Assembly: GCA_037447605.1 (NCBI GenBank)
Contig: CM074810.1
Location: 1,088,880 to 1,152,879 of the forward strand
From: Zygnema circumcarinatum SAG 698-1b
Lineage: Eukaryota; Plantae; Zygnematophyceae
Direction of reading: 5' to 3'
DNA length: 64,000 bases
Part shown: positions 4,295 through 61,619 of the stretch, piece after piece
Numbering within the stretch: position 1 is the stretch's first letter
How the letters are laid out: every line of letters starts with the position of its first letter
Position numbers and translations under genes: made by a program
Notes under the pieces: generated by a model
The model's input: only the letters and a program-made list of their open reading frames with translations
What the model was told of the DNA's origin: nothing
Databases searched by the model: none

Positions 4295-5178
4295 CAGGCC
4301 TCTTCAAATAGGGGATTTCGGCTTAAGATAGGGGACTGTCCCCTAACTTGGTTTTGTAAAAACACGTAAATATGGACTGTACGGACGAAACCGTGCACGT
4401 ACGGACGAGAATTTTGTGGAGACCTTGCTTCATCATTTCCCAACACTGCTACCGTCGAGTCTGATTTTTCAGTAATTGGATGGGAGAAAGACGAGTTTCG
4501 AAAGAGGTTGACAGACTTTTCATTGGAAGGAATTCTTCACTGCAAACAGTTTGATAGTTTGACCGCTCTTCGAGGGTCTCTTTGAGTAGTTTGCATCACT
4601 TCTATAGCTGTCTTGATCAGCTAAAACTCCTAAGGGAGTGAGACCATTTTTCATTTCATTTCTAATTTTAGTTCCTATTTCAGTTTTTCTTTTGTGACTA
4701 CACCTAGAATTTCAGAGGTTATGATTTGGAATAGAGTTTTTGTGAGTAAATTTCAAGACTATGATAGATTCTAAAGTGATACTTGGAGTAATTAATGATG
4801 GATGGAAAAGGAAATAGAGAGCTTAGGATTGGATCTACAAAGTTTCAGTGCAATTGGGTTTTTGAATAAGCAACTATATGTTGTGATTGCCAAATGCACA
4901 GTTGTTCTAATTGATTGATAAAATTTATCAATCTATAAGAGTCGAAGAGGTTGCACCAGTTTTTAAAGCCGTGTTGTTATACCAACAAGTAAAGTTCATA
5001 TACATCATTGCTATCGTGGTTGCAAATGCAATTCATTTCCATTTTGTTTTTAACCAAAAAAATGCTTTTTTGGGGCTTGTGTGGTATTTAAGTTGAAATC
5101 ACGTAAACTAATCTCAAAATCTTACATAAATAAGCTATTTACGATATTTAGGGGATCTCCCCTATTTGAAGGGGCCTG
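4295..5178. mobile_element. hAT-type non-autonomous DNA transposon (MITE)
   Basis: TIR CAGGCCTCTTCAAATAGGGGA / TCCCCTATTTGAAGGGGCCTG (1 mismatch). Perfect 8-bp TSD CTGATATA at 4287-4294 and 5179-5186. Confidence 0.9.
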
Positions 5179-5192
5179 CTGATATATATTAA

Positions 5193-5447
5193 TTTACAAC
5201 GCCTTTACAACATGTACGGTCGTACGGTCGTACCACTGTACGGTATTATGCGGCCCGAGCACGAGCAGACAGAGTGAACCAGACGGACGCATTTCGCAAC
5301 GCCAACGCCAAAACGACCTAATTTTGGTATGGTACGACCGTACGACCGTACGAGTACGGTCGTTAATTGTTCAAAACGAGTGGGTATAATATATGTAATA
5401 AAGTGTTTTACTTTGTAATATATTACTAATTTTAAACCCGTTGTAAA
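5193..5447. repeat. Small foldback / MITE-like element
   Basis: Perfect 22-bp inverted repeat at 5214-5235 and 5330-5351 (GTACGGTCGTACGGTCGTACCA). Outer TTTACAACG/CGTTGTAAA pair in AT-rich flanks. Confidence 0.55.
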
Positions 5448-5820: not shown

Positions 5821-6225
5821 GCACACGGCGTGGCGTGAGCGATGTTGAACATGACACCAGCAAGCAAGGCGGCAGCCTGCTCAATCCAACTTTGTTTTCC
5901 AGGGCTGGCTTTAGCATACATGGGTAGTAGATTCGAGTCTTCGAGGAGTAGCTTCGAGGGAGAAAAAAAGGGAAGCGAGTGAGAAGGAGAGGAGAAGAAG
6001 AAGAGAACAAGAAGAAGCAACACCAAACTCGATTTGAGGAAGAAGAACCACGAGCGTCAATGGAAGAATTTCCAAGTGGTGGGGATGACCCCCAATGCTA
6101 ATTGTGGCGAGGGGTCATCGACTCATCTATTAAATGTATGAATATGTATATAATATAATATATGTATATAATATGTATGTATGTGGCAATATAGTGGCAA
6201 AATTTTCAAAAGTGAAAAACGCAAA

Positions 6226-6260: not shown

Positions 6261-6366
6261 GGGATCAATGCCACTTTCTTCATTTTCAAAAGGAAGTTTA
6301 ATGATTTAAGTCAAAATCCAAGAAACTAATTCTGGCCACACGAGTTCCAAAACGAGAAGATAATGT

Positions 6367-6483
6367 GGGTGCGACACCGGGACTTCCCGGGAGGGAACCC
6401 ATCCCAGTATTATTTCAGCCCACAGGCGCTTAGCTGCGGGATTCTGAAGGGATTTGGCGTAGTAGCCTAGGTATGATCGCACC
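6367..6483 (-). rRNA. Solitary 5S rRNA gene or 5S pseudogene
   Basis: Minus strand reads GGTGCGATCATACCTAGGCTACTACGCCAAATCCCTTCAGAATCCCGCAGCTAAGCGCCTGTGGGCTGAAATAATACTGGGATGGGTTCCCTCCCGGGAAGTCCCGGTGTCGCACCC. It has 5S length and motifs, and helices I, II and IV can pair. Some normally invariant positions differ. Confidence 0.8.
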
Positions 6484-6972
6484 ACAATATAATCAATAAC
6501 GTTACTACTAAATAATTATAGTAATTTTTATACAATCCAATTTCCAAGGCCGCCAAAGTTCTGATCCGTACGGCGGCTGGGCGAATGATGGGAGGCCGTC
6601 GCCGTGCTGGCATCCACGTCCAATGGCAGAGCGCCACGTGTACAAATGACGACACGTGACGTTTTTTAATGCAAATGGCGCTTGTCTCATTCGTCAATTC
6701 TTGACTGCAGAGCACAGAGGCGAAAGGCCCTCGCAGAAACGGACAAAAATTTGCTTGCAGTCCGCCACTCCCCAGACCTTCTGGCCAATCAAAAGGCGCC
6801 ATACAGTTGACGAGCCTCTCAGATTTGGCCACGTGGACTGGTGCTTAAATCGCCGCAGAAGAATTATGGCGGATTTGCATGGACTTTTTTGCTATTTTCT
6901 TGGAAGGCCCTGCAAGAAGGGATAGCTGCAGGAGGAAGCGAGGGCTGCTGCTGGGAAGGTAGGGGGCTGGCC

Positions 6973-49087: not shown

Positions 49088-49776
49088 TAGGGGGTGTCAG
49101 ACTTAAAAAATTTCAGTACGCGTGTTCGTAAGTTTGACATCAGAACGAGTACTCCAGTATAATAGCGATCCTCGTGCGGCGGAGTACTTTCGTAACCTTT
49201 TTTTTCGTAACGCTTTTCGTAAGATTTTGTTAAGTCTGACACCCCCTACTGTAAATAGTCGTTTCCTTTTCCCGGAATTCCGCACGAGGCTATCCAACGG
49301 TCTCCTCGCTTGCGGCTATTGGAGTCAATGGTTGCCAAGCATTGCCAATAATAGGGGGTGTCAGACTTAAAAAATTTCAGTACGCGTGTTCGTAAGTTTG
49401 ACATCAGAACGAGTACTCCAGTATAATAGCGATCCTCGTGCGGCGGAGTACTTTCGTAACCTTTTTTTTCGTAACGCTTTTCGTAAGATTTTGTTAAGTC
49501 TGACACCCCCTACTGTAAATAGTCGTTTCCTTTTCCCGGAATTCCGCACGAGGCTATCCAACGGTCTCCTCGCTTGCGGCTATTGGAGTCAATGGTTGCC
49601 AAGCATTGCCAATAATAGGGGGTGTCAGACTTAAAAAATTTCAGTACGCGTGTTCGTAAGTTTGACATCAGAACGAGTACTCCAGTATAATCGCGATCCT
49701 CGTGCGGCGGAGTACTTTCGTAACCTTTTTTTTCGTAACGCTTTTCGTAAGATTTTGTTAAGTCTGACACCCCCTA
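49088..49776. mobile_element. Three tandem copies of a 157-bp TA-TSD MITE (Tc1/mariner/Stowaway-like) separated by identical 107-bp spacers (264-bp period)
   Basis: Copies at 49090-49246, 49354-49510 and 49618-49774. TIR GGGGGTGTCAGACTTA/TAAGTCTGACACCCCC, each copy flanked by TA. Confidence 0.9.
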
Positions 49777-50099: not shown

Positions 50100-53000
50100 A
50101 TGGCTGCACGCGCTGTTCTGTGTCAGCCTGGCAAAACTCAGAGACTGAAATCGTCAATTTTTGCAGAGTTTGAAGGCTCAATCAACTTGAATGTGAATTT
50201 TGGACACCAGAAAAATGACAACAGCGCGCGAGGAGTGGTTTTTATACGGGAGTTTAAGTGTTCGAATCTATGTCCAACGGATAGTTACTTTTCTGAAGTT
50301 ATTTTGACGAACTCAAGAAAGTTTGACAGTGTGAGCTCCAAAAAGAGACGGTTCCTTGGAAGAGAATGCCTTGTTGGAGTAGCGACGCTTAGAAAAAATT
50401 GTACAAGGCGTGTCTCTGATTACAGGGAAGCTCACTTTCTTGCGGCGAAAGCAGGTCTGGTAGAAGATTCTGAATCCTCGCACCCTGAGGATGGAAAGGA
50501 CGAGAGGAGCTCAAGCAGCGTAGGCGTTTCAGAAAAAGCTAGATTCCAAGCTAAAAGGATGTCAAGAGGGCTTTCAAACAAGGTCAACGAGGGTGTTGAC
50601 AGTGAGGGCTTACACGAACAAACTGGTTTTGATAACTTGAATATGGTTTCCATGAGTGAGGAGAGAGCGAAGGAGATTCAGGAGTTTCTTAGCCAGAACG
50701 TAAAGATGCCTCTTGTGTCGAGTACCCGCGTGTTGCAGAAAGGAGCAGGGGTAGAGAGAGGATATAATGCTGAATGGAGTCTGCGAGCCTTCATGCTGGC
50801 TATTGGCAAGTGGATTAAACTAGCTTTGAAGGTAACGTTCGTCGTCACGACAAACTCTCTCACAACCAATAATAAAAAAAAAAAATTAAGATACACACTT
50901 GCTCGATCATTACGAGTTGATCAGAGTGCTGCAAGCTTCCTCATGCATTGTCAATCATGCGCGAGTTCCGTTGCGTCGAGTTAATGATGAAGCAATTTCC
51001 TTAAGCCAAAACAGTATTTTTAGTCTTTCAGTTTCTTTTAGTCATATAAGAGAGAGGGGGGGGGGAAGAAGCTGACACTTCTACGCTGCGTAATTAGTGT
51101 AGTATATCTGTCACCTCTAGAGCTCGAAGAAAATGCAGAATCCTTTCTGGAGTTTAAATGATCCCAACTGCAAAAGGAGCTGTGTGCCTTGAATCGCCAG
51201 CTTCGTTTGCCAAAGTGACAAATCCGCAATGTTTCCTCTGGCGTGTAAGATAAGTTTTTGTTTTGCGTCATGAATACAACAATAGTTGGCCGCTGGTCAT
51301 GCCGAGTGTATCTGTTGACTTGAGGGCATTGTCCTCAAAAGTATCTTAATCACTTCTAATAGGCCCTAATTGAATCCGTACATGTGATATACCAATCCTG
51401 GATCCTTTTCAGGCTCACTAGAATCGGAAGCTTTACTTACCAACACTCTTGTAGAGGCTGATGGTCAAGGATTGACTCACCGAAAGATGTTGGTATTTTC
51501 CATGCTCTCAAGGACGCACGTTTCATCGTCGACCTGGTTTGTTCGATGGTGCTGTTTTTCCTAGAATTTGCCTGCATTATTTATCTCAGTAACGAATGCC
51601 GCCTGTGCTTCGATTCATGAGGCTGTTCCGTGCCGTTTTTCAGGTGTCCATCGTCAGCACGCTGGCACTAGCTGTGGCAGTTCTCGCTTTCAGGCTTCCT
51701 GGTCGACTGAAGAGCACTCGAGACTTGTTTGAACCTAAAGTTGCATTTGCGGCACCTAGTGCTCGTCAGCATCGTGAGAACAACACTAAAGACAGGAAGA
51801 TGGAACTATATACTGAGGGGCAGCAAGCTGAAGTGCACCGCTTAATATCCCAAGGGAGGGAGAGGGGTGCTCTGCCCCAGGCCTGGCCTTCTTGGCAGCC
51901 TGTAGCTGTTTCAAGAAGACAGGCAATGAAGTTGGACATTACTCCGCCCAATCTGCTCGACTTCAACTGGTCATCAGCAAAGCTTACGTATACCCTTGAT
52001 GTGCTTTTGGAAAAGCATCCAGCTACGTAAGTAAGCTGCTGCCAATCTGATGTGCATTCGTTTGAAGTCTACTAGAGGACACAGGATGGAGAAATGACAA
52101 GCATTCTCCCCGTGGGTGCATGAAAGCCGAGTTTTTCCAAGGAGCTCGGCTCAGGAGTTACCATTGTATCATGTGGAACTATAGATCTGCTTTTATGTTT
52201 TATGTATGGTTTCCACACAGTATGAATGTCAATAATTGTTCATGAATAAAATCTGGACTGCCTCTATAGGAGGTTTGGAGGTTTGATATTCAAATGCAAG
52301 CCACCCATGGTCTGCTGAGGATTTTGTGCAGGTACATATTGCTCCTGATGGTGCTCTGCTTCACACTCGTGTCAATCGGAGGAGTCGTTCTCCGAAGTTA
52401 CCGGTACTGCTGCTTTACTATGTCATCTGATAGTTCGGTGCTGCATCCAGAAATTGCTGATACCAGGGTTTTTTTTTTTTGGTAAAAATAGTGCCTAAGA
52501 TCAAACATTCTGTCGTGAACTTGTCTTTTGTTGGTTGTCCACGTGATTGCAGAAGTTACTAACGTGCATTACAAGCTTGTAGCTTCTTATTACTGAAAAT
52601 AACTAGGGATATGAAGAGCCTGAGTTGTATTGCTTTCACTCGAGCATTCACTCGAGAAGAGGATTTACACGTAAAGAACATTATTCTAGAATACAGGATG
52701 CTGAGGTAGGCTATGAACCAGAGTCGTAAAGCATGCTTTTCAAGACAGGCCGTTTATTCTTTTGGAATTTTGTGTCTAGTTTTTAAAAATGACTCCATGG
52801 ACAGCTGCGACCATGTCTGACGGGATTCCGGTGTGCACTAAGAGATCGATCCCTCTTGAGTTGTTCTTTGATTTAGTGATACAATCATTAAATCCAGCTG
52901 GACTTAGTTACAGCATGCCGGACTCTTGGTATCCGGCAATCCACAGATTGTGGGTTAAATTCTTAGTAGGCGACGCGACTTATGTTTGCCCAATAAAGAT

Positions 53001-56000
53001 GTCGATGTCTCACAGTCTAAGGTACTAAAGAATACAGCCATTTTAGCATTTTAAATGAGAATATGATTAAAACCTATAGGAGAATCACATTACACATATG
53101 TTGATAGGAAGATCTTCAAAACCATTATCTCATCCTGTGTATGAGGCTAGAAAGCCACCCTGCGTTGCTATGCAGTACAATGCATAAGCTTGCTCTCTTG
53201 GACCTTCAACGTCCTGCTCCCACTCTATAACTGCAGAAAGGGCGAGTATGGCGAAGCCCTCTGGGAGGCTTGGGCTTGCGTGGCCTCCTCCTCGTTTCAC
53301 CTCCAGGTAATCCCCAGGGCATGTAGGCAGAGAGTATCCTGAACGGAGCCCCTTACCCATACCTAGAGGCTTATTCCAGAACGTGTGTTGTTTTTGGCAT
53401 GGGTTGGCTGTCTGGGAATGCGGTATGTGGCCTCCGGTTCATTTTCGAATATGGTAATGTTTGGACCTGGCGGAACGCTCGTTGTCTGCTGTACCTTTTC
53501 GAGCATTGTGGTTCGCCTAATGACGATGCAGGGAGCCCTGCGTGCCATTGGGAGAGGCTATGTGGGAATCGTGGGCAAATGTGTGCTCCTCTCGCATGCA
53601 CCTGAGGGTGAGTCAGCTCCTCTTCTGGCCAAAGCTGCTCAGAGAAGGAGGATTCGCTTGGCAAGACCAAGCGGGACATAGGAATTCCATGAAATTGAAG
53701 GTGGTTGGGGTGGCAAGAGATGAGATAAGGTTGAAATCCTGCTGCACACTTACAACAGTTCGGACAGTTGCAAGGCAGATATATGAAGCTCGTGGTTGAA
53801 TGTGAAAAGCAGCATACATAAAGAAAAGGGAAACGATCGTAACCTGTCAGAGTAGGAGAAGGAATTGTGTAGCGGTTGCTTGCCTTGTGTTGTACCTCAA
53901 GCGGACAGTTGTTTGAATTGCTTGGTATACGTTTTCCATTACCTTGCACCTTTGTGGAATGTTTCCTTGTCGTCTTCATTGGTCTGGCTAGCTTTCGTTC
54001 TTCCGTCTACTGAAGGGGCAGGTTCGCATGCAATCTGTGATTGCTTAACTGACAGTGCTCCGTCCAGGTGGTACATTTACGGCATTTTCTGGTTGTCGTT
54101 CGATGAAAATATGTCAAGTGGAACTTTTATCATAGAGAATGACTATGCTCAATCTCAGAATACTCTTGTGTGATGTACGATGCAGGAAAAGACAAAGCAA
54201 GGTCGTATAATTGGCATGATGTTGGCCCTTGGAGGACTCCTTTTCTACTCCCTGCTCACAAGCACCATGACCGCGAAGTTCAAGGTATGGACTTTTGAAA
54301 TTTTCAAACTGCTGCTCCTCTACAGCTTCCACGGTTTTATGCAACCCATCCTGTATTGAAGGTCGATCTTTTTTCACAGAATGAAACATGTGAAGCGCTC
54401 GAAAATTAGTGGATAAAGTATTTGGAAGTTAACTGCTACAAGAGCTCTATGGAGCCTTCAATCTTTCGGATGTATGTACATCCTTTGCTACACACGAGCA
54501 ATAATAAAAAAAAAAAATGGACGCTTTCTGCAGGAGCGCATGGAGAGAATTCGAGAAGGCGGTTATTCGCAGGTGATGGAGTCGCAGCACATTATTGTTG
54601 TTGGTAGCAACAACCACATTGGCACTGTCCTTCGTCAGCTGAACAAAAGCCACGAGTTTGCTGTTCGAGATGGCACAGCCGACAGGAGGTATTCAACAAA
54701 ATCCATTTTGCTTCTGGTGATCCTTCTTTCCCAGTAGATGGAGGGTAATGGAGGTGCCAAAGTGCACGCCAATATCAGCAGGAATGGATCCACTATTGGG
54801 GGCATATTGCAGGAAGCAAACAGTCTTGGTGCTGTCGGAGCAACAACGACGAGAGACAGAAAGGCATCTTTCATCCGTAAGCAAGGATTGCAAGGACATC
54901 AACATCCTGACACGCAGGTATAGCAAATGTCTGTTATGTTGAATCGACTGTCTGATAGCCTTCGTTTCCCTCCTTGACAAACTTGTTCGACAAGAGCCTT
55001 GGTAAGTTTTAGGGAATCACTAGAATTTCATGGCATATCTATCCAGCAAATAAATCATTCTCTCTTTTCCGTCCAAACACTTTTGTCCTCCGTATTCAGG
55101 TCCATTCTGTAAGTCCACAGTGCAAAACGCTAGTGCCACGTGTTGTCGAAGTTGTTTTTGTCACTTAGAGGGAACACTGGTGATGATTACTGTAAATCCG
55201 TTCAGATTGACCTGAGAGAGTGAACCCTTAGATTTTATGTTTGAATTGCTTCATCCACTAATCCTCTTTAACTCAGGAGAAGGTTTTGAGAACGTTTCCC
55301 CAAGCAGCAGCTCATGCATCTCTTGTTCAATTTGTGAACCGCCTAGTTTGGGTATAGACTTTGTACTTGTCTCGTTTGGCTACCAATTCGTATAATGCAT
55401 GCGAATGAAGTTCTTTTTTTTTTTTAATAATGAATAGAGTAGAATGATGCAATACTTTGGAACCCACAGTATTATCTGTTGTTTGTTTCATCAATAGTAA
55501 ACCAATGGCTTCAACAGTATGCTCCTCCAAGCTAATCGCCCATCCCCATATGAAAAAATCATGACGTCATCTGTGCCATACATTCTCCAAGGGACCATGC
55601 TGGTACGGACTGCATGATCAGACGTGCTCCCTTAAATAATGTATGTGACGCGGAGTGTGGGAAAATGGAGCTGCAGCGGAAGTCTGAGCAGCACATCGTC
55701 ATTTGAGAAAATCGCAGCAGATAAGGCCCGCTCCATCATCTTACTGGCCAGCAAGGATGACAAGTAAGTGCCTAACGCATCCAGCCAAAACTCTACTCTT
55801 TCATAAGTTTTCAATGTTCGAGCCGCCGCTGAGGGTTAAATGAAACATATTGAAAGGCATGTGGCATTTTCCCTTTTGGGAAAAAGGACTGATATCATCG
55901 TAGTCGTCTCTATCTTCTCTCACTCTCTCTCTCCCTCTCTCTATGTCCTCTTGCGCTCTCCAATGGGCAAACAGCTATGAATCAGATGCAGACTCCGTAC

Positions 56001-59000
56001 TGTCAGTGTTGGCTCTGCAGCCTCTGGTGGGAGACAGGCTTGCGAATGTGGTGGTGGAGGTGAGGACAATCTGCAAAAAAAAATTGTATGGACCCATTTT
56101 TTGTTCGGGCTGACATTCGCAGACTATTCACAAAACCCTAAAAACCCTAAATCCACTGCAATTATGGATGTTTGGAAAAAGAGCCAGAAAATTTCAAAGA
56201 TTTGCATGGTACACAGCAGCTCTCGTTCGGTTTCGGTATGCTATATCCCGAAACTTTGTCGAAAGTAAACACAGTGGACTCCTTTCTTCTGGACATGCGA
56301 ATGTAGAGTCCACGATGCCTGGTAAAATCACAGATTTCAAGGTGCCGTCTCATGCCACACGAGAGCATATGTCTATGAAATGATTTTTTTCAGGGTTTCG
56401 CAGATAGCCTTGCCCTTCTCCTCCACTTCTTGTACCTTACCCAAATGAAGTATTTGTTTTCATAGTCAAGGAAATGATTTAAAATCCACGTCCGGGCTGC
56501 TCAGTTACTTTGAGGCCGTCATTTTCTTTGCAGGGTGTCTCTCCTTCACTTTTTAACTAGGGAACGATGATGAATTAGCACAGCCGCTTGCTCAGTACTG
56601 GATAATCAAACGAACTTGCCAGAGAGCTGTGCAGGTTTTACACGCAGTTCGTCTAGGTCCATCACAAAGCATCTCCACTACCGCTTCAAGTTGGCCAATG
56701 CACCGTAGCTGGTCACGATGTCTTACTCAATGACAAAAACTCAAAAACTCGATGACCCTCTCGATGTCCTCTGTCTCTCGATGCCCCACTCAACTTACAT
56801 TTCTCGCTACTCTAACGTCCCCAATGCCTGCTGATCGTCTGTGAATGCGGCTTTGTAACTTGGTGTGTGAAGGTTTCTAAAACGAGCACTGCGGAGCTGC
56901 TGTACACTCTGACCGGCATTAAGATCAGCGCTGTAGAGGACCTCTCGGCGAAGCTCTTCGTGCAGTGCAGCAGACAGCCCGGCCTCATCGATGTCTATCG
57001 CCGCATGCTCGACCATGGGAGTGAGCCACCCGCCCATCACTGTCCACCTCCAACTCTCTGCTTTATGGGAGCCAACGCATACAGACAGCGCTTAGGAAGG
57101 GTGATTTTCTGAAGGGATGATGCACTACAACGCAGCGTTTCTGTTATAGTCTTCGTCGTCGTTGCTTTCACGCATGCTGGTCGGCCTATCTGTTGGTCAT
57201 CTTCCTAATTCCAACAGTTTTGGGATATCAGAAGAGGTGATCAACCTGCGACACTTCCCTGAACTCGCTGGGCTGCCTTACCGGGAAGTGAGGAGAGGTT
57301 TTCAAGAGGTGGGTGGTGTTTGTGGGACTGTGGCATGAGAGAGGGTTTCTTACACAGCAGAATGTGGGATTTATCGAATTGAAGAAACATGTCACTGCCA
57401 CTAATTTCAGAGCTTGATCAACTCAGAATCAGAGCGTTTATGAGGAAGGGTTTGCTATCTTCCGTGCAGGCTGTAGTTTGTGGTATTGTGCGAGAGGGAG
57501 AACCGAAGTTCCGACCTTGGGAGTTTGAGATTCTGCAAGAAACAGACAAGGTAATTGCACATTCTTGAAGATCTATCTGCACACAGTTGTGGAAGGCTTT
57601 TCACCTGCTGCGAAATGCTGGAAAGTTGTCTGAATGCTAAACTTCAGCTCCATTAGCTCCTTCACCCGATCAAGCCCAAGCCTGTGCATGAAAATGTTGA
57701 GTAACCTTCGGCTTATTGTTTACTTAACGCCATGTGTGTACAGCTTATGTTGATCGCCCCCAAGCACACTCACAGAGAGCCCCCGGCAGCTCTCACTACT
57801 TTGGCTGCCGCCTACAGAAAGGCTATTCCGGATCTCTCTGGCAGAGGAGGAGGAGGCGGAGGAGAGAACATCATACATGACACTGTTCTGTCAGCCAACC
57901 TGGGAGCCATTGTTCAACGACCGGCCAAAGCAAAGTTCAAGGTCAAAGAATTGGGCCCCTAAAGACTCGAGAAACCAAATTGGAATTTCGTTACTTAAAG
58001 ATACTGTGACGAGCAGAACTAGTTTTGACTTCATTCTGTGTCGGCTAGTGATTGGAGGCTTGTTGGTGTGATGCAGACAGCGGATTGGACGACGGCCAAG
58101 AAGGAGCGGATTGTCATGTTGGGATGGCGACTGGGGGTGACGGACATGATCCTCGAATACGACGACTATGTTGGGCCGGGCAGTGAACTGGTAAGTCTTG
58201 ACAAGGAGAGCGCTATTCGGGATTTCGGAAGTGATAAGACATTTTCCAACTATGTGTGACAACAGTTGAGTACTTCGTGGGAGTACTTAGTCGCCAGCTT
58301 GAGAGTGCAACTCATTGGGGACCATCTTTCAGAAGTTTTTGTTAATTTCAAGTCTGTTTGGAGCACTCAATTTCATTACAGTGGAAGCCATTTCCAATGG
58401 ATCGTCCACTCCATGGGGTCGGCAAGCTTTCTTGCTCTACCTGTGGTCTTGTATCCCCAATAAGGGTAGCAGATTGTGAACTAGTGCACTGTATGATCAC
58501 TCCAAGCAGTGGCTGCATACGTCACGGTTCAGACTTACAGAACTCCTTGTATTCGAAAGGCAGTGAAGAGGAGTGCTAATTCAGTTTGCTGAAAATGTAA
58601 CTGTTTGTTTTCCCCTAATTCTCTTTGTATTGTTATGTTTTCAGGTGATCCTTGCTCAGACTCCCATCAAAGAACGGCAGGGCCATTTAAGTCGGAGAAT
58701 CCGAGCTCCGCTTCGTAATCTACACGTCACTCACAAGGTAACAACGACCTACTTGGGAGTTCTGTGAATAGCGGAGAGGTTCAGTTGGCTTCAGAGCTAA
58801 ACACATAGTCGTGTTTACCGTAGCCCAAGGACTCTATTGGATAAGTTTACTTCTCATGTCTTCACGACTAGATCACCTGCAGGTACTGACTACGAGATGA
58901 ACCACATACTATTAATAAGCTAGACTTCTTTTGCCTGTTCTCTCTGTTGGGATGCATGCTGAATGTTCTGATAGAAAGTACGATTGGCTTCTTCCTACTT

Positions 59001-61619
59001 TTAAGTGTCCTACTCTCTCACCTTTAGTGACGTTGAACTGGCCTTTGATCTGGACCAGCAAACACGTCACTTATTCTTCCTTCCTCGATTTCAACTATTC
59101 TCGCTCTGCGTCCATCCTGCAGGTCGGCAGCATCATGAGTCGCACCGACATTAGAGACGCCATATTGAATATTGAGGTGCCCGTTCCGGGTCTGGAAGCA
59201 TCAGATAAGTATGTAGCGGCAAAGAAAGGAAAGAATTATGGCTTCAACAGCAGCAAAGACAAGAAGAAGCAGAAGCAGAAGGAGGTGGAGAAAAGGAAAG
59301 AGACGGAGAAAGATAAGGGGAAAGAAAAGGAGGCGCCTCTATCCATCGTCGTGATTTCAGATAGGAGTTTTAGTTCAGGATGTAAGTCATTTGAATCAAC
59401 ACGAAGCTTCCATGATTGCCTACTGTTCAGCGTGTTAGCAAAACTTCCAGTACTTTGTTGCGTGAGTGCGGGTAAAGCATCTTCAAGAGCATGAGCCCAT
59501 ATACCGGAGCCCTGACAATCACCAATTCGGTGTTCTATTGTTTCAGCTCCCGATGGAGGGAAACCTGATAAGCAGTCCGTGTTCTCCCTGTTGCTGGCGG
59601 AGGCAGTGTGCCGGCAGTACGAAATAAAGGTCCGTGATTCTCCATTCTGAAATCAAAAAGCACAGAAAGTACGTCCTGAACGAATACGTGAAATGTACAT
59701 GAAGAAGTACAAGAACGGTTGGGGGTAGAAATTGTGAGTTTTCTGTTTAGAGTCTCCCAAACTTACCGACTTTTCTGATTCAGTTTCTGACTGTGTGTGT
59801 GTGTTTGGGGTTAACTGCTGGTGGAGTTGGAGCAGCTTCAAGCACTTGTGGCGGAATTGGTGGACACGAAGCTCGGCAAACAGGTAGGCTCACGTTTTGC
59901 CGCAAAGAAAGAATAAATTCGGAAAATACCAAGTGAGGAAGGCGGGCGATGATTTTGAAGGTTTCCAGGCTATGATTTCTCTGAATGTCATCTGCACAAT
60001 TTGTTCAAAGAGGTTTAATGAGACATAAGGACCTTCAAGGTTGAGTCAAACTTGCAAAGGAATACAGGGATCCTTATAGTTTTTTCTCCTATTTCAAAAA
60101 TGTAAGGAAAGTGGTTATCATGCTGCCTCAGGATTCCAATGCTGAGGGGCTCCCAAGTTGCATGTTGGAATTTCTGCTTATGAACACAATTTCTATTCGC
60201 AAGAGTTCTACTCCTGCTTGGCTGTTCAGTTCAGTTATAGACAGAGAGGCGTTCTCAGGACATTTCATGGATCTTTAAGCCTCGTTGGTAGCCTCTCAGC
60301 GTTCAATGCCCTCACGTAGTGCGTCTTCCTTCCTCCCACGTACACACCCACTCTCGCTGTCACTGGTAGTGGCTTAAGATGGCCGCCATAGTGAACATGA
60401 GCTGAGTTTTCCCTTCATGGGTGCTCAGGTAGTTAACGCTCATCCCTCAATCAGCTACGTCAGCACCAGCGACCTCATGGGCCTCGTCATTTCACAGGGT
60501 GAGCCGGCTCTGCACTGCTCCCCCTTCAATTTTTGACTTCGACGCTGCAAAAGGTGCACGCGTGATAGCAGGCCGATGACCCGAGGGAGAGTGTAAAGAC
60601 GCTATAAGTACGAAGCGAGGAACAGAAAGGGATGGTTTAAGTACATGAATTGGTCGGACTTTTGCAGTTTAAGAGATAGCCTGCATGCTTGTTGGTTTGT
60701 ATTTTCCTACTCTGAGAGCTGCAGAAGGAACAAAAGCAATTGAACTGCAGGCATAGCAAATGTGCAGCATTCTAGCTATGGACTACGGGGAAGAAGGGAA
60801 GAGGGGAATAGGACTCCAATGCATACACGATGGGGAGTAACAATCTCACTCGCAAGGGTCCCCTCAATGAACAATCAGACTGCAGATTCCATAAGCAAAA
60901 AAGGGAGGATGGACTACATTTCACTCAGTTTGAAACGTTTGCTTTGTGGCAGTGGCGGAACACAACGATTTGCTGAAGATATGGGAAGAGCTGCTCAATT
61001 CCTGGGGGGATGAAATCTACGTCAAGGTGAGCAGCTACCAGCAAAGTTTTACCATGGGGAGGAGGAAGGAGGGAGTTGGGAGCGGGTTGGTTATTGCCTC
61101 GTGCATTCGCCTCATTTGTATGTGTTAGAGCACCCTTCAGATGTGACAGTTTAGCTTAGTCAGGTTCTGTTGTAACTGACTGTGCTGGTTGGCTCTGCAG
61201 AACATAGAGCTGTACAAGCGTCCTGGAGAGGAACCCACATTCGCTGAGCTGGCGGAGCGCGCGGTTTTGCGAGAGGAAGTGGCTATCGGTATTCGACAAG
61301 GGGGGCGAACAGTAAGTGCTTTTCCAGCTCGTGGCTCACAAAGGGTTCAGAGAAACCTCAAGCCCCAACGCATCTGAACGTGATGTGAAGAGTCAATCCT
61401 CTCCTTTCCTTCATATCAGGGTTTAGTCCGAGCATTCTTGGGGATTATGGCTAAGCAACCTCCATACAGATCGAAGACTTCATCTAATTTGTCCCTGCAA
61501 GTATGGTCAGATTTTCCTAAACTAGTGCGAAAATTCTGCAGATGATCAACCCGCCAAAGGATGTACCGCTCTCCTTCACGCCTGGCGATAGCCTTGTTCT
61601 CATTTCCGAGTTTGAGTAG
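50100..61619 (+). CDS. PEC1: Plastid envelope cation channel PEC1/PEC2-like (POLLUX-like, 2 TM + tandem RCK domains), about 22 exons
   Basis: ATG 50100 with transit-peptide-like exon 1. Later exons encode YILLLMVLCFTLVSIGG, GRIIGMMLALGGLLFYSLLTSTMT, REGGYSQVMESQHIIVVG, SCSGSLSSTSSFEKIAADKARSIILL, YESDADSVLSVLALQP, SAKLFVQCSRQPGLIDVYRRML, GFQEAVVCG, LNSWGDEIYVK, TFAELAERA..REEVAIG and INPPKD..GDSLVLISEFE*. The motifs fit the PEC clade better than CASTOR/POLLUX proper. Confidence 0.9.
53237..53306 (+). CDS. PEC pore exon, alternative A (RKGEYGEALWEAWACVASSSFHLQ)
   Basis: CTGCAG|..|GTAATC borders. 70 nt, phase 2 in and phase 0 out, joining exon 52332-52403 to the exon starting at 54186 in frame. 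Confidence 0.85.
53532..53607 (+). CDS. PEC pore exon, alternative B (REPCVPLGEAMWESWANVCSSRMHLR)
   Basis: ATGCAG|..|GTGAGT borders. 76 nt, phase 2 in and phase 0 out, homologous to alternative A. Confidence 0.8.

What the first reader, a model, noticed from the sequence alone, without database searches (positions are those of the whole stretch)
53237..53607. Duplicated, mutually exclusive pore/selectivity-filter exons in a plastid PEC/POLLUX-like ion channel
Seen: between the TM1 exon (ends phase 2 at 52403) and the TM2 exon (starts phase 0 at 54186) lie two homologous exons, A (EALWEAWACVASSSFHLQ) and B (EAMWESWANVCSSRMHLR). Both have strong splice sites and are phase 2 to 0. Skipping both shifts the frame. 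Including both also shifts the frame and reaches TAG at 54605. Exactly one can therefore be used. Established: this segment aligns with the CASTOR/POLLUX/DMI1 pore helix and filter (EALWLSWTFVADSGNHAD), where a single filter residue changes channel behaviour. Inference: one gene makes two channel isoforms with different filters. B places Arg at the position of the filter Gly (Ser in A) and a second Arg after the His, which could change cation selectivity or conductance, or silence the channel. Mutually exclusive exons are rare in plants, and I know of no report for this family.
Basis: partly seen in the sequence, partly recalled or inferred. Interest (0 to 1): 0.92.

Follow-up and report, generated by a model that had tools for sequence, protein, structure and literature searches.

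The report
Alternative pore exons in algal PEC channel
A green alga closely related to land plants makes two versions of a PEC-family (plastid-envelope-type) ion channel by choosing one of two ancient duplicate exons for the pore's selectivity filter; the same exon pair is kept in Closterium, giving a natural experiment on what this poorly understood channel conducts.

Summary
Exon A (53237-53306, 70 nt) and exon B (53532-53607, 76 nt) are homologous. Both have AG/GT splice sites and the same phase, and they lie between the TM1 exon (52332-52403) and the TM2 exon (54186-54284) of a 23-exon gene of the PEC clade (50100-61619).

Using A alone gives 1073 aa and B alone 1075 aa. Using both gives a stop at TAG 54605. 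Using neither gives a stop inside the TM2 exon.

Spliced RNA contigs from three studies show TM1->A, A->TM2, TM1->B and B->TM2. A+B appears at lower depth in one run. Skipping both was never seen. The A:B balance differs strongly between runs.

The pair is ancient and selected:
- Synonymous sites between A and B are saturated.
- Closterium has the same TM1/A/B/TM2 layout, and GenBank lists both isoforms of one gene (GJP39026.1 and GJP39027.1).
- A third alga's RNA contig carries a B-type exon.
- B-type exons share N-V/L-C-S-S-R-x-H-L-R, against the family consensus C-L-C-S-S-S-T-H-L-K.
- Two moss genomic contigs hold one copy; annotated proteins of other land plants and Klebsormidium show one pore type.

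I found no paper describing this. The functional effect of the filter arginine is inferred, not tested. One run suggests that B can also be transcribed from a start inside the intron. The scan read this same stretch once more (s1-397107); its claim of extra decayed copies did not hold.

The parts
50100..61619 (+). Whole coding region of the PEC-clade channel gene: 22 constitutive exons plus A or B. Isoform A is 1073 aa and isoform B 1075 aa.
   Evidence: Exon borders come from RNA joints and from splice-aware fitting to P0089. All introns are GT..AG. The tree places the protein in the PEC clade.
52332..52403 (+). TM1 exon (outer pore helix); ends in phase 2
   Evidence: joints 52026->52332 and 52403->53237/53532.
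53237..53306 (+). Exon A: pore helix plus a near-canonical PEC filter (WACVASSSFHLQ), 70 nt
   Evidence: TM1->A joints in X1, X2 and X3; A->TM2 joints in X1, X2 and X3. Family consensus WACLCSSSTHLK.
53307..53531 (+). Intron between A and B (225 nt). It is removed in the A+B form and retained in some contigs.
   Evidence: Joint 53306->53532 in X1 (depth 14.3). Contiguous contigs 53278-53606 (X3) and 53278-54069 (X2).
53532..53607 (+). Exon B: pore helix plus a divergent filter with Asn and Arg (WANVCSSRMHLR), 76 nt
   Evidence: TM1->B joint in X1; B->TM2 joints in X1, X3 and X5. Orthologous B exons in Closterium (L003 5358-5433, 76 nt) and in L005.
54186..54284 (+). TM2 exon (inner pore helix); starts in phase 0
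54605..54607 (+). Premature TAG reached when both A and B are included. It lies in exon 6, with about 16 exon junctions downstream.
53417..53531 (+). Intron stretch that is contiguous with exon B in run X5: an apparent internal transcript start
   Evidence: X5 contig 24 (2385 nt, depth 150) begins at about 53417. Nothing from X5 is laid on 53247-53416, and X5 has no TM1->A or TM1->B joints.

Best explanation
This is a conserved pair of mutually exclusive, tandem-duplicated exons in a PEC-clade (plastid envelope ion channel, 'POLLUX-like') gene of a zygnematophyte-type alga.

Shown:
- The two exons encode the same structural unit: the linker, the pore helix and the filter of a KcsA-like 2TM pore.
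- Each exon is spliced to both common neighbours in RNA.
- Only single inclusion keeps the frame.
- Double inclusion occurs at lower depth and gives a premature stop.
- The same A/B architecture, with both isoforms annotated, exists in Closterium.
- B-type exons of three species share N-V/L-C-S-S-R-x-H-L-R and evolve under purifying selection.

Inferred:
- The cell assembles tetrameric channels from A subunits (near-canonical PEC filter S-S-S-F/T-H), from B subunits, or from mixtures. B subunits carry Arg where the family has Ser/Gly and CASTOR has Gly, and Asn where the family has a near-invariant Cys.
- A ring of up to four arginines at the base of the filter should strongly lower or change cation permeation. 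Choosing the exon would then tune or switch conductance without changing the RCK gating ring.
- Exclusivity is enforced by the reading frame plus nonsense-mediated decay, not by steric, U12 or RNA-pairing mechanisms.
- The A:B ratio differs strongly between data sets, which suggests regulated choice.
For: - Sequence and frame.
- RNA joints, with contig-mean depths:
  - TM1->A: X1 41.8, X2 27.6, X3 80.8.
  - A->TM2: X1 37.7, X2 99.1, X3 40.6.
  - TM1->B: X1 30.3.
  - B->TM2: X1 51.6, X3 16.1, X5 150.3.
  - A->B: X1 14.3 only.
  - No 52403->54186 joint in any run.
- Age and selection:
  - A vs B: 60% nucleotide identity, third positions 7/19 identical, pS 0.88, pN 0.27.
  - B-type exons between species: pN 0.12-0.16, pS 0.63-0.75.
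  - B vs Closterium B is the only significant nucleotide match between the two TM1-TM2 intervals (77.6% over 67 nt, E 2e-6).
- Conservation:
  - Closterium isoforms P0016 (GJP39026.1) and P0065 (GJP39027.1) are identical except for the A-like or B-like exon.
  - The Closterium genomic layout has the same phases: A 73 nt, B 76 nt, TM2 99 nt.
  - A B-type exon is spliced to TM2 in RNA contig L005 of a third alga.
- Phylogeny: (window gene, L005 species) is sister to Closterium, support 100/97, inside the PEC clade.
- One copy only in two moss genomic contigs. Annotated proteins of other land plants and Klebsormidium show a single pore type.
- Pore identity. CASTOR filter AD265S(A)GNHA, where D265N is dead and the S/A difference is functional (PMC6697748).
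Against: - RNA evidence is from assembled contigs only. Depths are contig means, no full-length isoform molecule was seen, and the conditions of the runs are unknown.
- The TM1->B joint was seen in only one of four runs. In X3, B reaches TM2 on RNAs that retain the A-B intron. In X5, B sits on an RNA that seems to start inside the intron and lacks TM1.
- The L005 contig has one extra A at the B/TM2 junction (7 A where 6 keep the frame), so it does not by itself prove an in-frame B isoform in that species.
- No protein or electrophysiological data exist for either filter.
- Plastid targeting was not testable.
Confidence: 0.8

Rival explanations
1. Exon B is used mainly as part of an alternative first exon driven by a promoter inside the TM1-A/B intron. 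That RNA would encode an N-terminally truncated protein (no transit peptide, no TM1; perhaps only TM2 plus the RCK ring) or act as a regulatory RNA. Under this reading the cassette-type TM1->B->TM2 isoform is a minor by-product.
For: run X5:
- The highest-depth contig (150) starts at about 53417 and runs unspliced into B, then on to TM2 and downstream exons.
- There are no TM1->A or TM1->B joints.
- The upstream exons (depth 44) read through the TM1 donor into the intron as far as 52935.
Against: - Amino-acid conservation of B across three species, in the frame set by TM1, would not be expected if B were 5'UTR or began at an internal Met.
- There is an in-frame TGA at 53521-53523 and there are several upstream ATGs.
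- The TM1->B joint exists in X1.
- Closterium annotates a full-length B isoform.
- The pattern rests on one run of one study.
Confidence: 0.12
2. Exon B is a dead or decaying duplicate. Its occasional inclusion is splicing noise, or serves only to make unproductive, NMD-targeted RNA.
For: In runs X2 and X3, A dominates, and B appears only in unspliced or intron-retaining contigs.
Against: - B alone is in frame.
- Synonymous sites are saturated, yet 12 of 19 core residues are kept between A and B.
- B is more conserved between species than A, in both amino acids and nucleotides.
- Splice sites, phase and the 76-nt length are identical in Closterium.
- B->TM2 is the dominant joint in X5 and the stronger one in X1.
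Confidence: 0.03
3. A and B belong to two paralogous genes that the assembly collapsed into one locus.
For: None found.
Against: - RNA contigs run contiguously from A through the intron into B (X2 53278-54069, X3 53278-53606).
- An A->B spliced joint exists.
- Independent Closterium assemblies of several strains have the same tandem layout.
Confidence: 0.01

Closest known systems
Arabidopsis PEC1/PEC2 (At5g02940, At5g43745), plastid envelope POLLUX-like channels (PMC8644588)
   Same: The window gene falls in the same clade in the tree, together with proteins that NCBI names 'POLLUX-like 2'. It has the same 2TM pore plus RCK/Castor_Poll_mid architecture. The filter motif of exon A is close to the family consensus WACLCSSSTHLK.
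   Different: Annotated land-plant proteins carry one pore type, and the two moss genomic contigs examined have a single pore exon. No alternative filter is described for them. The paper reports K+ complementation and a role in stromal Ca2+ release, but no electrophysiology and nothing on splicing.
Closterium sp. NIES-67/68 gene CLOM_g23421 / CLOP_g18404, isoforms GJP39026.1 and GJP39027.1
   Same: It is the orthologue, with the same TM1/A/B/TM2 layout, the same phases, a 76-nt B exon and the B signature N-L-C-S-S-R-Q-H-L-R.
   Different: The two isoforms exist only as unnamed database entries ('hypothetical protein'). My searches found no paper that describes them. The introns are shorter (A-B intron 136 nt against 225 nt).
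CASTOR/POLLUX/DMI1 nuclear channels and their filter AD265S(A)GNHA (PMC6697748)
   Same: They belong to the same superfamily with a homologous pore helix and filter. Single filter residues decide function: the Ser/Ala difference between CASTOR/POLLUX and DMI1 is functional, and D265N kills the current.
   Different: They form a different clade. Their filter variation is fixed between genes and species, not chosen by splicing. PEC filters have Ser where CASTOR has the critical Asp. Exon B has Arg where CASTOR has Gly.
Invertebrate NALCN alternative selectivity-filter exons (PMC3557258)
   Same: Alternative exons swap the pore-loop segment, so that a filter residue changes charge (Ca-like EEEE against Na-like EKEE/EEKE). 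One gene therefore gives two filters (details from the paper's title and abstract and from my own knowledge).
   Different: That is an animal four-domain channel in which only one of four repeats changes. Here a homotetrameric 2TM channel could change all four subunits. The two cases have independent origins.

Membership tests
Mutually exclusive tandem-duplicated exons (MXE) | Two adjacent exons that are homologous to each other | tested here: met
   A vs B tblastn E 5e-6, 12/19 core residues identical. Exactly two profile hits in the interval.
Mutually exclusive tandem-duplicated exons (MXE) | Same splice phase and similar length, so that either exon fits the frame, while both or neither breaks it | tested here: met
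   70 and 76 nt, both phase 2 to 0. A alone gives 1073 aa and B alone 1075 aa. A+B stops at aa 502 and skipping both stops at aa 404.
Mutually exclusive tandem-duplicated exons (MXE) | Each exon is joined in RNA to both common flanking exons | tested here: met
   All four joints are present in X1. The A joints are also in X2 and X3, and B->TM2 is also in X3 and X5. The evidence is at contig level, not from single molecules.
Mutually exclusive tandem-duplicated exons (MXE) | Forms with both or neither exon are absent or unproductive | tested here: met
   The A->B joint occurs only in X1, at the lowest depth (14.3), and gives a premature stop. No 52403->54186 joint was seen in four runs. NMD itself was not tested.
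Mutually exclusive tandem-duplicated exons (MXE) | A splicing-level exclusivity mechanism (steric hindrance, U2/U12 incompatibility, competing RNA pairing) | tested here: not met
   The A-B intron is 225 nt and is demonstrably spliced. All donors are U2-type: GTACTG, GTAATC, GTGAGT. The only inverted repeat is weak, 15 nt at 80%. Many accepted MXE pairs also rely on frame plus NMD alone.
PEC clade of the CASTOR/POLLUX/DMI1 channel family | Phylogenetic placement with PEC proteins | tested here: met
   In the tree of 24 full-length proteins, the window gene groups with the L005 species and Closterium. This group sits among sequences from mosses, a lycophyte, a fern and seed plants (the latter named 'POLLUX-like 2' by NCBI). 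The three-clade framework is from PMC8644588. No CASTOR/POLLUX sequences were in my tree.
PEC clade of the CASTOR/POLLUX/DMI1 channel family | Castor_Poll_mid domain (PF06241) and RCK domains | tested here: inconclusive
   A single window exon scores 21 bits, E 3.5e-4, below the 26.7 cut-off. The spliced protein could not be handed to the Pfam tool. The closest relative P0089 and Closterium P0016 carry PF06241 and PF22614. Another window exon (58029-58256) matches the soluble domains of DMI1 and CASTOR weakly.
PEC clade of the CASTOR/POLLUX/DMI1 channel family | KcsA-like 2TM pore with pore helix and a short non-TVGYG filter | tested here: met
   phmmer match to Lmo2059 (E 0.003) and to KcsA. 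AF2 model of the orthologue has pLDDT 81, and its best PDB matches are KcsA (TMq about 0.6, probability 1.0).
PEC clade of the CASTOR/POLLUX/DMI1 channel family | Family filter motif W-A-C-L-C-S-S-S-T-H-L-K/R | tested here: met
   Exon A (WACVASSSFHLQ) is close to it. Exon B (WANVCSSRMHLR) departs at Cys->Asn, Ser/Gly->Arg and Thr->Met.
PEC clade of the CASTOR/POLLUX/DMI1 channel family | Plastid inner-envelope location, K+ conductance and a role in stromal Ca2+ release | not testable with these tools
   No targeting predictor or assay was available. The properties are known only for Arabidopsis PEC1/2 (PMC8644588).

The most novel reading that the evidence does not exclude
Exon B yields a PEC subunit with a ring of filter arginines. 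Such a subunit would either convert the channel to a different permeation mode (strongly reduced cation flux, or even anion permeation) or act as a built-in negative subunit in A/B heterotetramers. Zygnematophytes would then switch the A:B ratio with conditions to gate plastid K+/Ca2+ signalling. [quoted passage not shown] It may be absent or lost in land plants, although only two moss loci were examined at DNA level.
Probability: 0.25. Interest if true: 0.85.

Novelty: new member of a known kind. Interest (0 to 1): 0.7.

Why it matters
What PEC channels conduct in vivo (K+ or Ca2+) is unresolved, and electrophysiology has failed so far (PMC8644588). What the non-TVGYG filter of the whole CASTOR/POLLUX family selects has also been disputed (PMC6697748).

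Here nature provides two filters on an otherwise identical channel. They have been kept since before the split of Closterium from the window's lineage, and they differ at exactly the positions known to matter in CASTOR/DMI1. Expressing the two isoforms, and swapping Arg with Ser/Gly, tests directly which residues set conduction.

It is also a clear, conserved, protein-level case of mutually exclusive exons in the green lineage, where such exons are rare. It further explains why ab initio gene models of this locus go wrong: the Closterium NIES-64/65 models fuse A and B.

Tried and rejected
tblastn, blastn and a profile scan of all six frames find only A and B; every other hit has a negative score or E > 0.4.
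- **Docking/selector RNA pairing.** The interval holds only a 15-nt, 80% complementary pair (53202-53216 / 53688-53702) and one palindrome. Apart from exon B, no intron sequence is conserved with Closterium.
- **U12 introns or steric exclusion.** The donors are U2-type and the A-B intron is spliced.
- **Dead duplicate and collapsed paralogues.** Both rejected; see the rival explanations.
- **B-type exons in environmental DNA.** A degenerate DNA pattern and a profile-guided scan of metagenome contigs found nothing.
- **This organism's own protein or RNA-contig proteins in the protein collections.** Not present, so isoform-level proteins of this species could not be fetched.
- **A solved full-length CASTOR/DMI1/PEC pore.** None was hit.
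- **Literature.** No paper links mutually exclusive exons to POLLUX, CASTOR or PEC.
Full report
**1. The observation**

Reading 52200-54700 and translating the pieces confirms every stated coordinate.
- The TM1 exon (52332-52403, ...YILLLMVLCFTLVSIGGVVLRSY + CG) ends in phase 2.
- Exon A (53237-53306, 70 nt) gives R-KGEYGEALWEAWACVASSSFHLQ.
- Exon B (53532-53607, 76 nt) gives R-EPCVPLGEAMWESWANVCSSRMHLR.
- The TM2 exon (54186-54284, 99 nt) gives EKTKQGRIIGMMLALGGLLFYSLLTSTMTAKFK.
- All borders are AG|...|GT.

A and B match only each other in the 64-kb window (tblastn E 5e-6). A profile built from pore exons finds exactly two copies between TM1 and TM2.

**2. The gene**

I built the whole model from RNA joints, collinear exons in relatives and splice-aware fitting to the closest relative P0089. 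The coding region runs from 50100 to 61619, with 22 constitutive exons plus A or B, and all introns are GT..AG.
- Isoform A is 1073 aa and isoform B is 1075 aa.
- Including both exons stops at aa 502 (TAG 54605-54607, in exon 6, far upstream of the last junction).
- Skipping both stops at aa 404, inside the TM2 exon.

The pore segment aligns with the TM1-pore helix-filter-TM2 unit of Lmo2059 (E 0.003) and KcsA. An AF2 model of the Closterium B-isoform pore (pLDDT 81) has TM1, a pore helix, a short filter segment and TM2. The alternative exon covers exactly the linker, pore helix and filter. The model's best PDB matches are KcsA (TMq about 0.6, probability 1.0, E about 0.014-0.03, none below 0.001).

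**3. Is it used?**

The ten runs found for this stretch are coded (organism A). Four of them, from three studies, were laid. All four hold GT..AG-spliced contigs, so they contain RNA. Joints and contig-mean depths:

| Joint | X1 | X2 | X3 | X5 |
|---|---|---|---|---|
| TM1->A | 41.8 | 27.6 | 80.8 | 0 |
| A->TM2 | 37.7 | 99.1 | 40.6 | 0 |
| TM1->B | 30.3 | 0 | 0 | 0 |
| B->TM2 | 51.6 | 0 | 16.1 | 150.3 |
| A->B | 14.3 | 0 | 0 | 0 |

No 52403->54186 joint was seen in any run. In X1 the figures balance roughly as A-only 38, B-only 30 and A+B 14.
- X2 is A-only, and B appears there only on an unspliced contig (53278-54069).
- In X3, B reaches TM2 on RNA that retains the A-B intron (53278-53606).
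- In X5, A is not expressed at all.

These are contig means, not read counts, so they show presence and gross differences only. The same contigs place A, the intron and B on one molecule, which rules out collapsed paralogues.

**4. Relatives**

- A first protein search found two genomic contigs (L001, L002). Their collinear exons match moss PEC proteins (Ceratodon, Physcomitrium). They have one pore exon (KQTMGDALWDAWACLCSSGTHLK) and no second copy in the roughly 260-nt intron before TM2.
- A profile of exon 6, searched against 1.8 billion representatives, brought in full-length family members.
- Across ferns, lycophytes, mosses, seed plants and Klebsormidium the pore motif is W-[DE]-[AS]-W-[AS]-C-[LVI]-C-S-S-[SG]-T-H-L-[KR].
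- Closterium is the exception. Gene CLOM_g23421 of strain NIES-68 (and CLOP_g18404 of NIES-67) has two GenBank isoforms that are identical except for the pore exon. P0016 (GJP39026.1, 1045 aa) carries RHKNLGEDLWDAWSALVSSSSHLK. P0065 (GJP39027.1, 1046 aa) carries RPQEPFGEALWDAWGNLCSSRQHLR.
- In the Closterium genome (L003) the layout is the same as in the window, all AG..GT. The TM1 exon ends at 4778 in phase 2, A is 5149-5221 (73 nt), B is 5358-5433 (76 nt) and TM2 is 5823-5921 (99 nt).
- Ab initio models of strains NIES-64/65 and Yama58-4 (P0014, P0015, P0078) wrongly string A and B together.
- An RNA contig of a third alga (L005, run SRR8128906, protein P0089) is the closest relative of the window gene, at 63-93% per exon. 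It begins at a B-type exon (PRGPFGEALWDAWSNVCSSRVHLR) spliced to TM2.
- In a maximum-likelihood tree, (window gene, L005 species) is sister to Closterium (100/97) inside the PEC clade. Spirogloea branches separately.

**5. Age and selection**

- A vs B: 34/57 nucleotides identical, third positions 7/19, pS 0.88 (saturated), pN 0.27.
- B-type exons between species: pN 0.12-0.16 and pS 0.63-0.75. This is lower than any A-B comparison (pN 0.24-0.33) and lower than A vs Closterium A (0.27).
- The only significant nucleotide match between the TM1-TM2 intervals of the two genera is B against B (77.6% over 67 nt).

The duplication therefore predates the split of these lineages. B is orthologous across them, and both copies have been kept as coding sequence. 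B is in fact the better conserved of the two.

**6. What differs**

The published CASTOR filter is A-D265-S(A)-G-N-H-A. There D265N abolishes current, and the Ser/Ala difference explains the DMI1 against CASTOR/POLLUX behaviour (PMC6697748). Against it:
- the PEC consensus is C-S-S-S-T-H-L;
- exon A is A-S-S-S-F-H-L;
- exon B is C-S-S-R-M-H-L.

Exon B also has Asn in place of the near-invariant Cys at the end of the pore helix. So B puts Arg at the CASTOR Gly position, next to the Ser/Ala site. By the HMM alignment to K+ channels this is about the position of the threonines at the inner end of the filter. That a ring of arginines there changes or blocks cation flow is inference.

**7. How exclusivity works**

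The A-B intron (225 nt) is long enough to splice, and it is spliced in X1. The donors are ordinary U2-type. No convincing competing RNA pairing exists, and no intron element is conserved with Closterium. The simplest reading is that the splice sites are chosen independently, and that the A+B and skipped forms are removed as premature-stop RNAs. NMD itself was not tested.

**8. Loose ends**

- **Run X5.** The upstream exons read through the TM1 donor into the intron as far as 52935, where the ORF ends at 52483 and an AATAAA lies at 52992. Nothing from X5 covers 53247-53416. A high-depth contig then starts at about 53417, runs into B and continues spliced to the 3' end. This looks like an internal start that gives RNAs without TM1. 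Its meaning is open, and I could not lay more reads.
- **L005.** The contig has 7 A where 6 would keep B in frame with TM2.
- **Spirogloea.** It has a separate small paralogue with a B-like pore helix (WANVC) but a different filter (P0036, P0069).

**9. Known or new**

- Alternative exons that swap pore or filter segments are known in animal channels. The closest analogue is invertebrate NALCN (PMC3557258).
- For PEC, CASTOR or POLLUX I found no report. The Closterium isoforms sit unnamed in GenBank.
- I therefore rate this a new member of a known kind. It is of real interest because it offers a natural filter swap in a channel family whose permeant ion is disputed.
- The same stretch was noted once more by the scan (s1-397107). 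Its claim of further decayed copies is not supported.

Noticed in passing
window 52404-52935 and 53417-53531 (run X5): In one run the gene appears as two RNAs. The upstream exons read through the TM1 donor into the intron, and a separate high-depth RNA starts about 115 nt upstream of exon B. Neither the A exon nor any TM1 splice joint is seen in that run.
   Followed up: partly
L005:71-83: The RNA contig of the closest relative joins a B-type exon to TM2 with GAAAAAAACT (7 A). Six A would keep the frame, so the called ORF starts only at the Met inside TM2. This may be an assembly or RT slip, or it may be a real variant.
   Followed up: partly
window 49088-49776: A 264-bp unit is repeated 2.6 times in tandem at 99% identity. 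The array ends about 320 bp upstream of the channel gene's start codon.
   Followed up: no
window 6366-6484 (-): A single full-length 5S rRNA gene (Rfam RF00001, 63 bits) lies among protein-coding genes.
   Followed up: no
P0036 / P0069 (Spirogloea muscicola small scaffolds): A separate PEC-like paralogue has a B-like pore helix (AMWDAWANVC) but an unusual longer filter, GPGSS[GD]ASSHAE. The three main Spirogloea copies have WASVCTSSYHLK.
   Followed up: no
P0014, P0015, P0078 (Closterium NIES-65, NIES-64, Yama58-4): Ab initio gene models string the A-like and B-like exons together in one protein. This annotation error is caused by the tandem alternative exons.
   Followed up: yes
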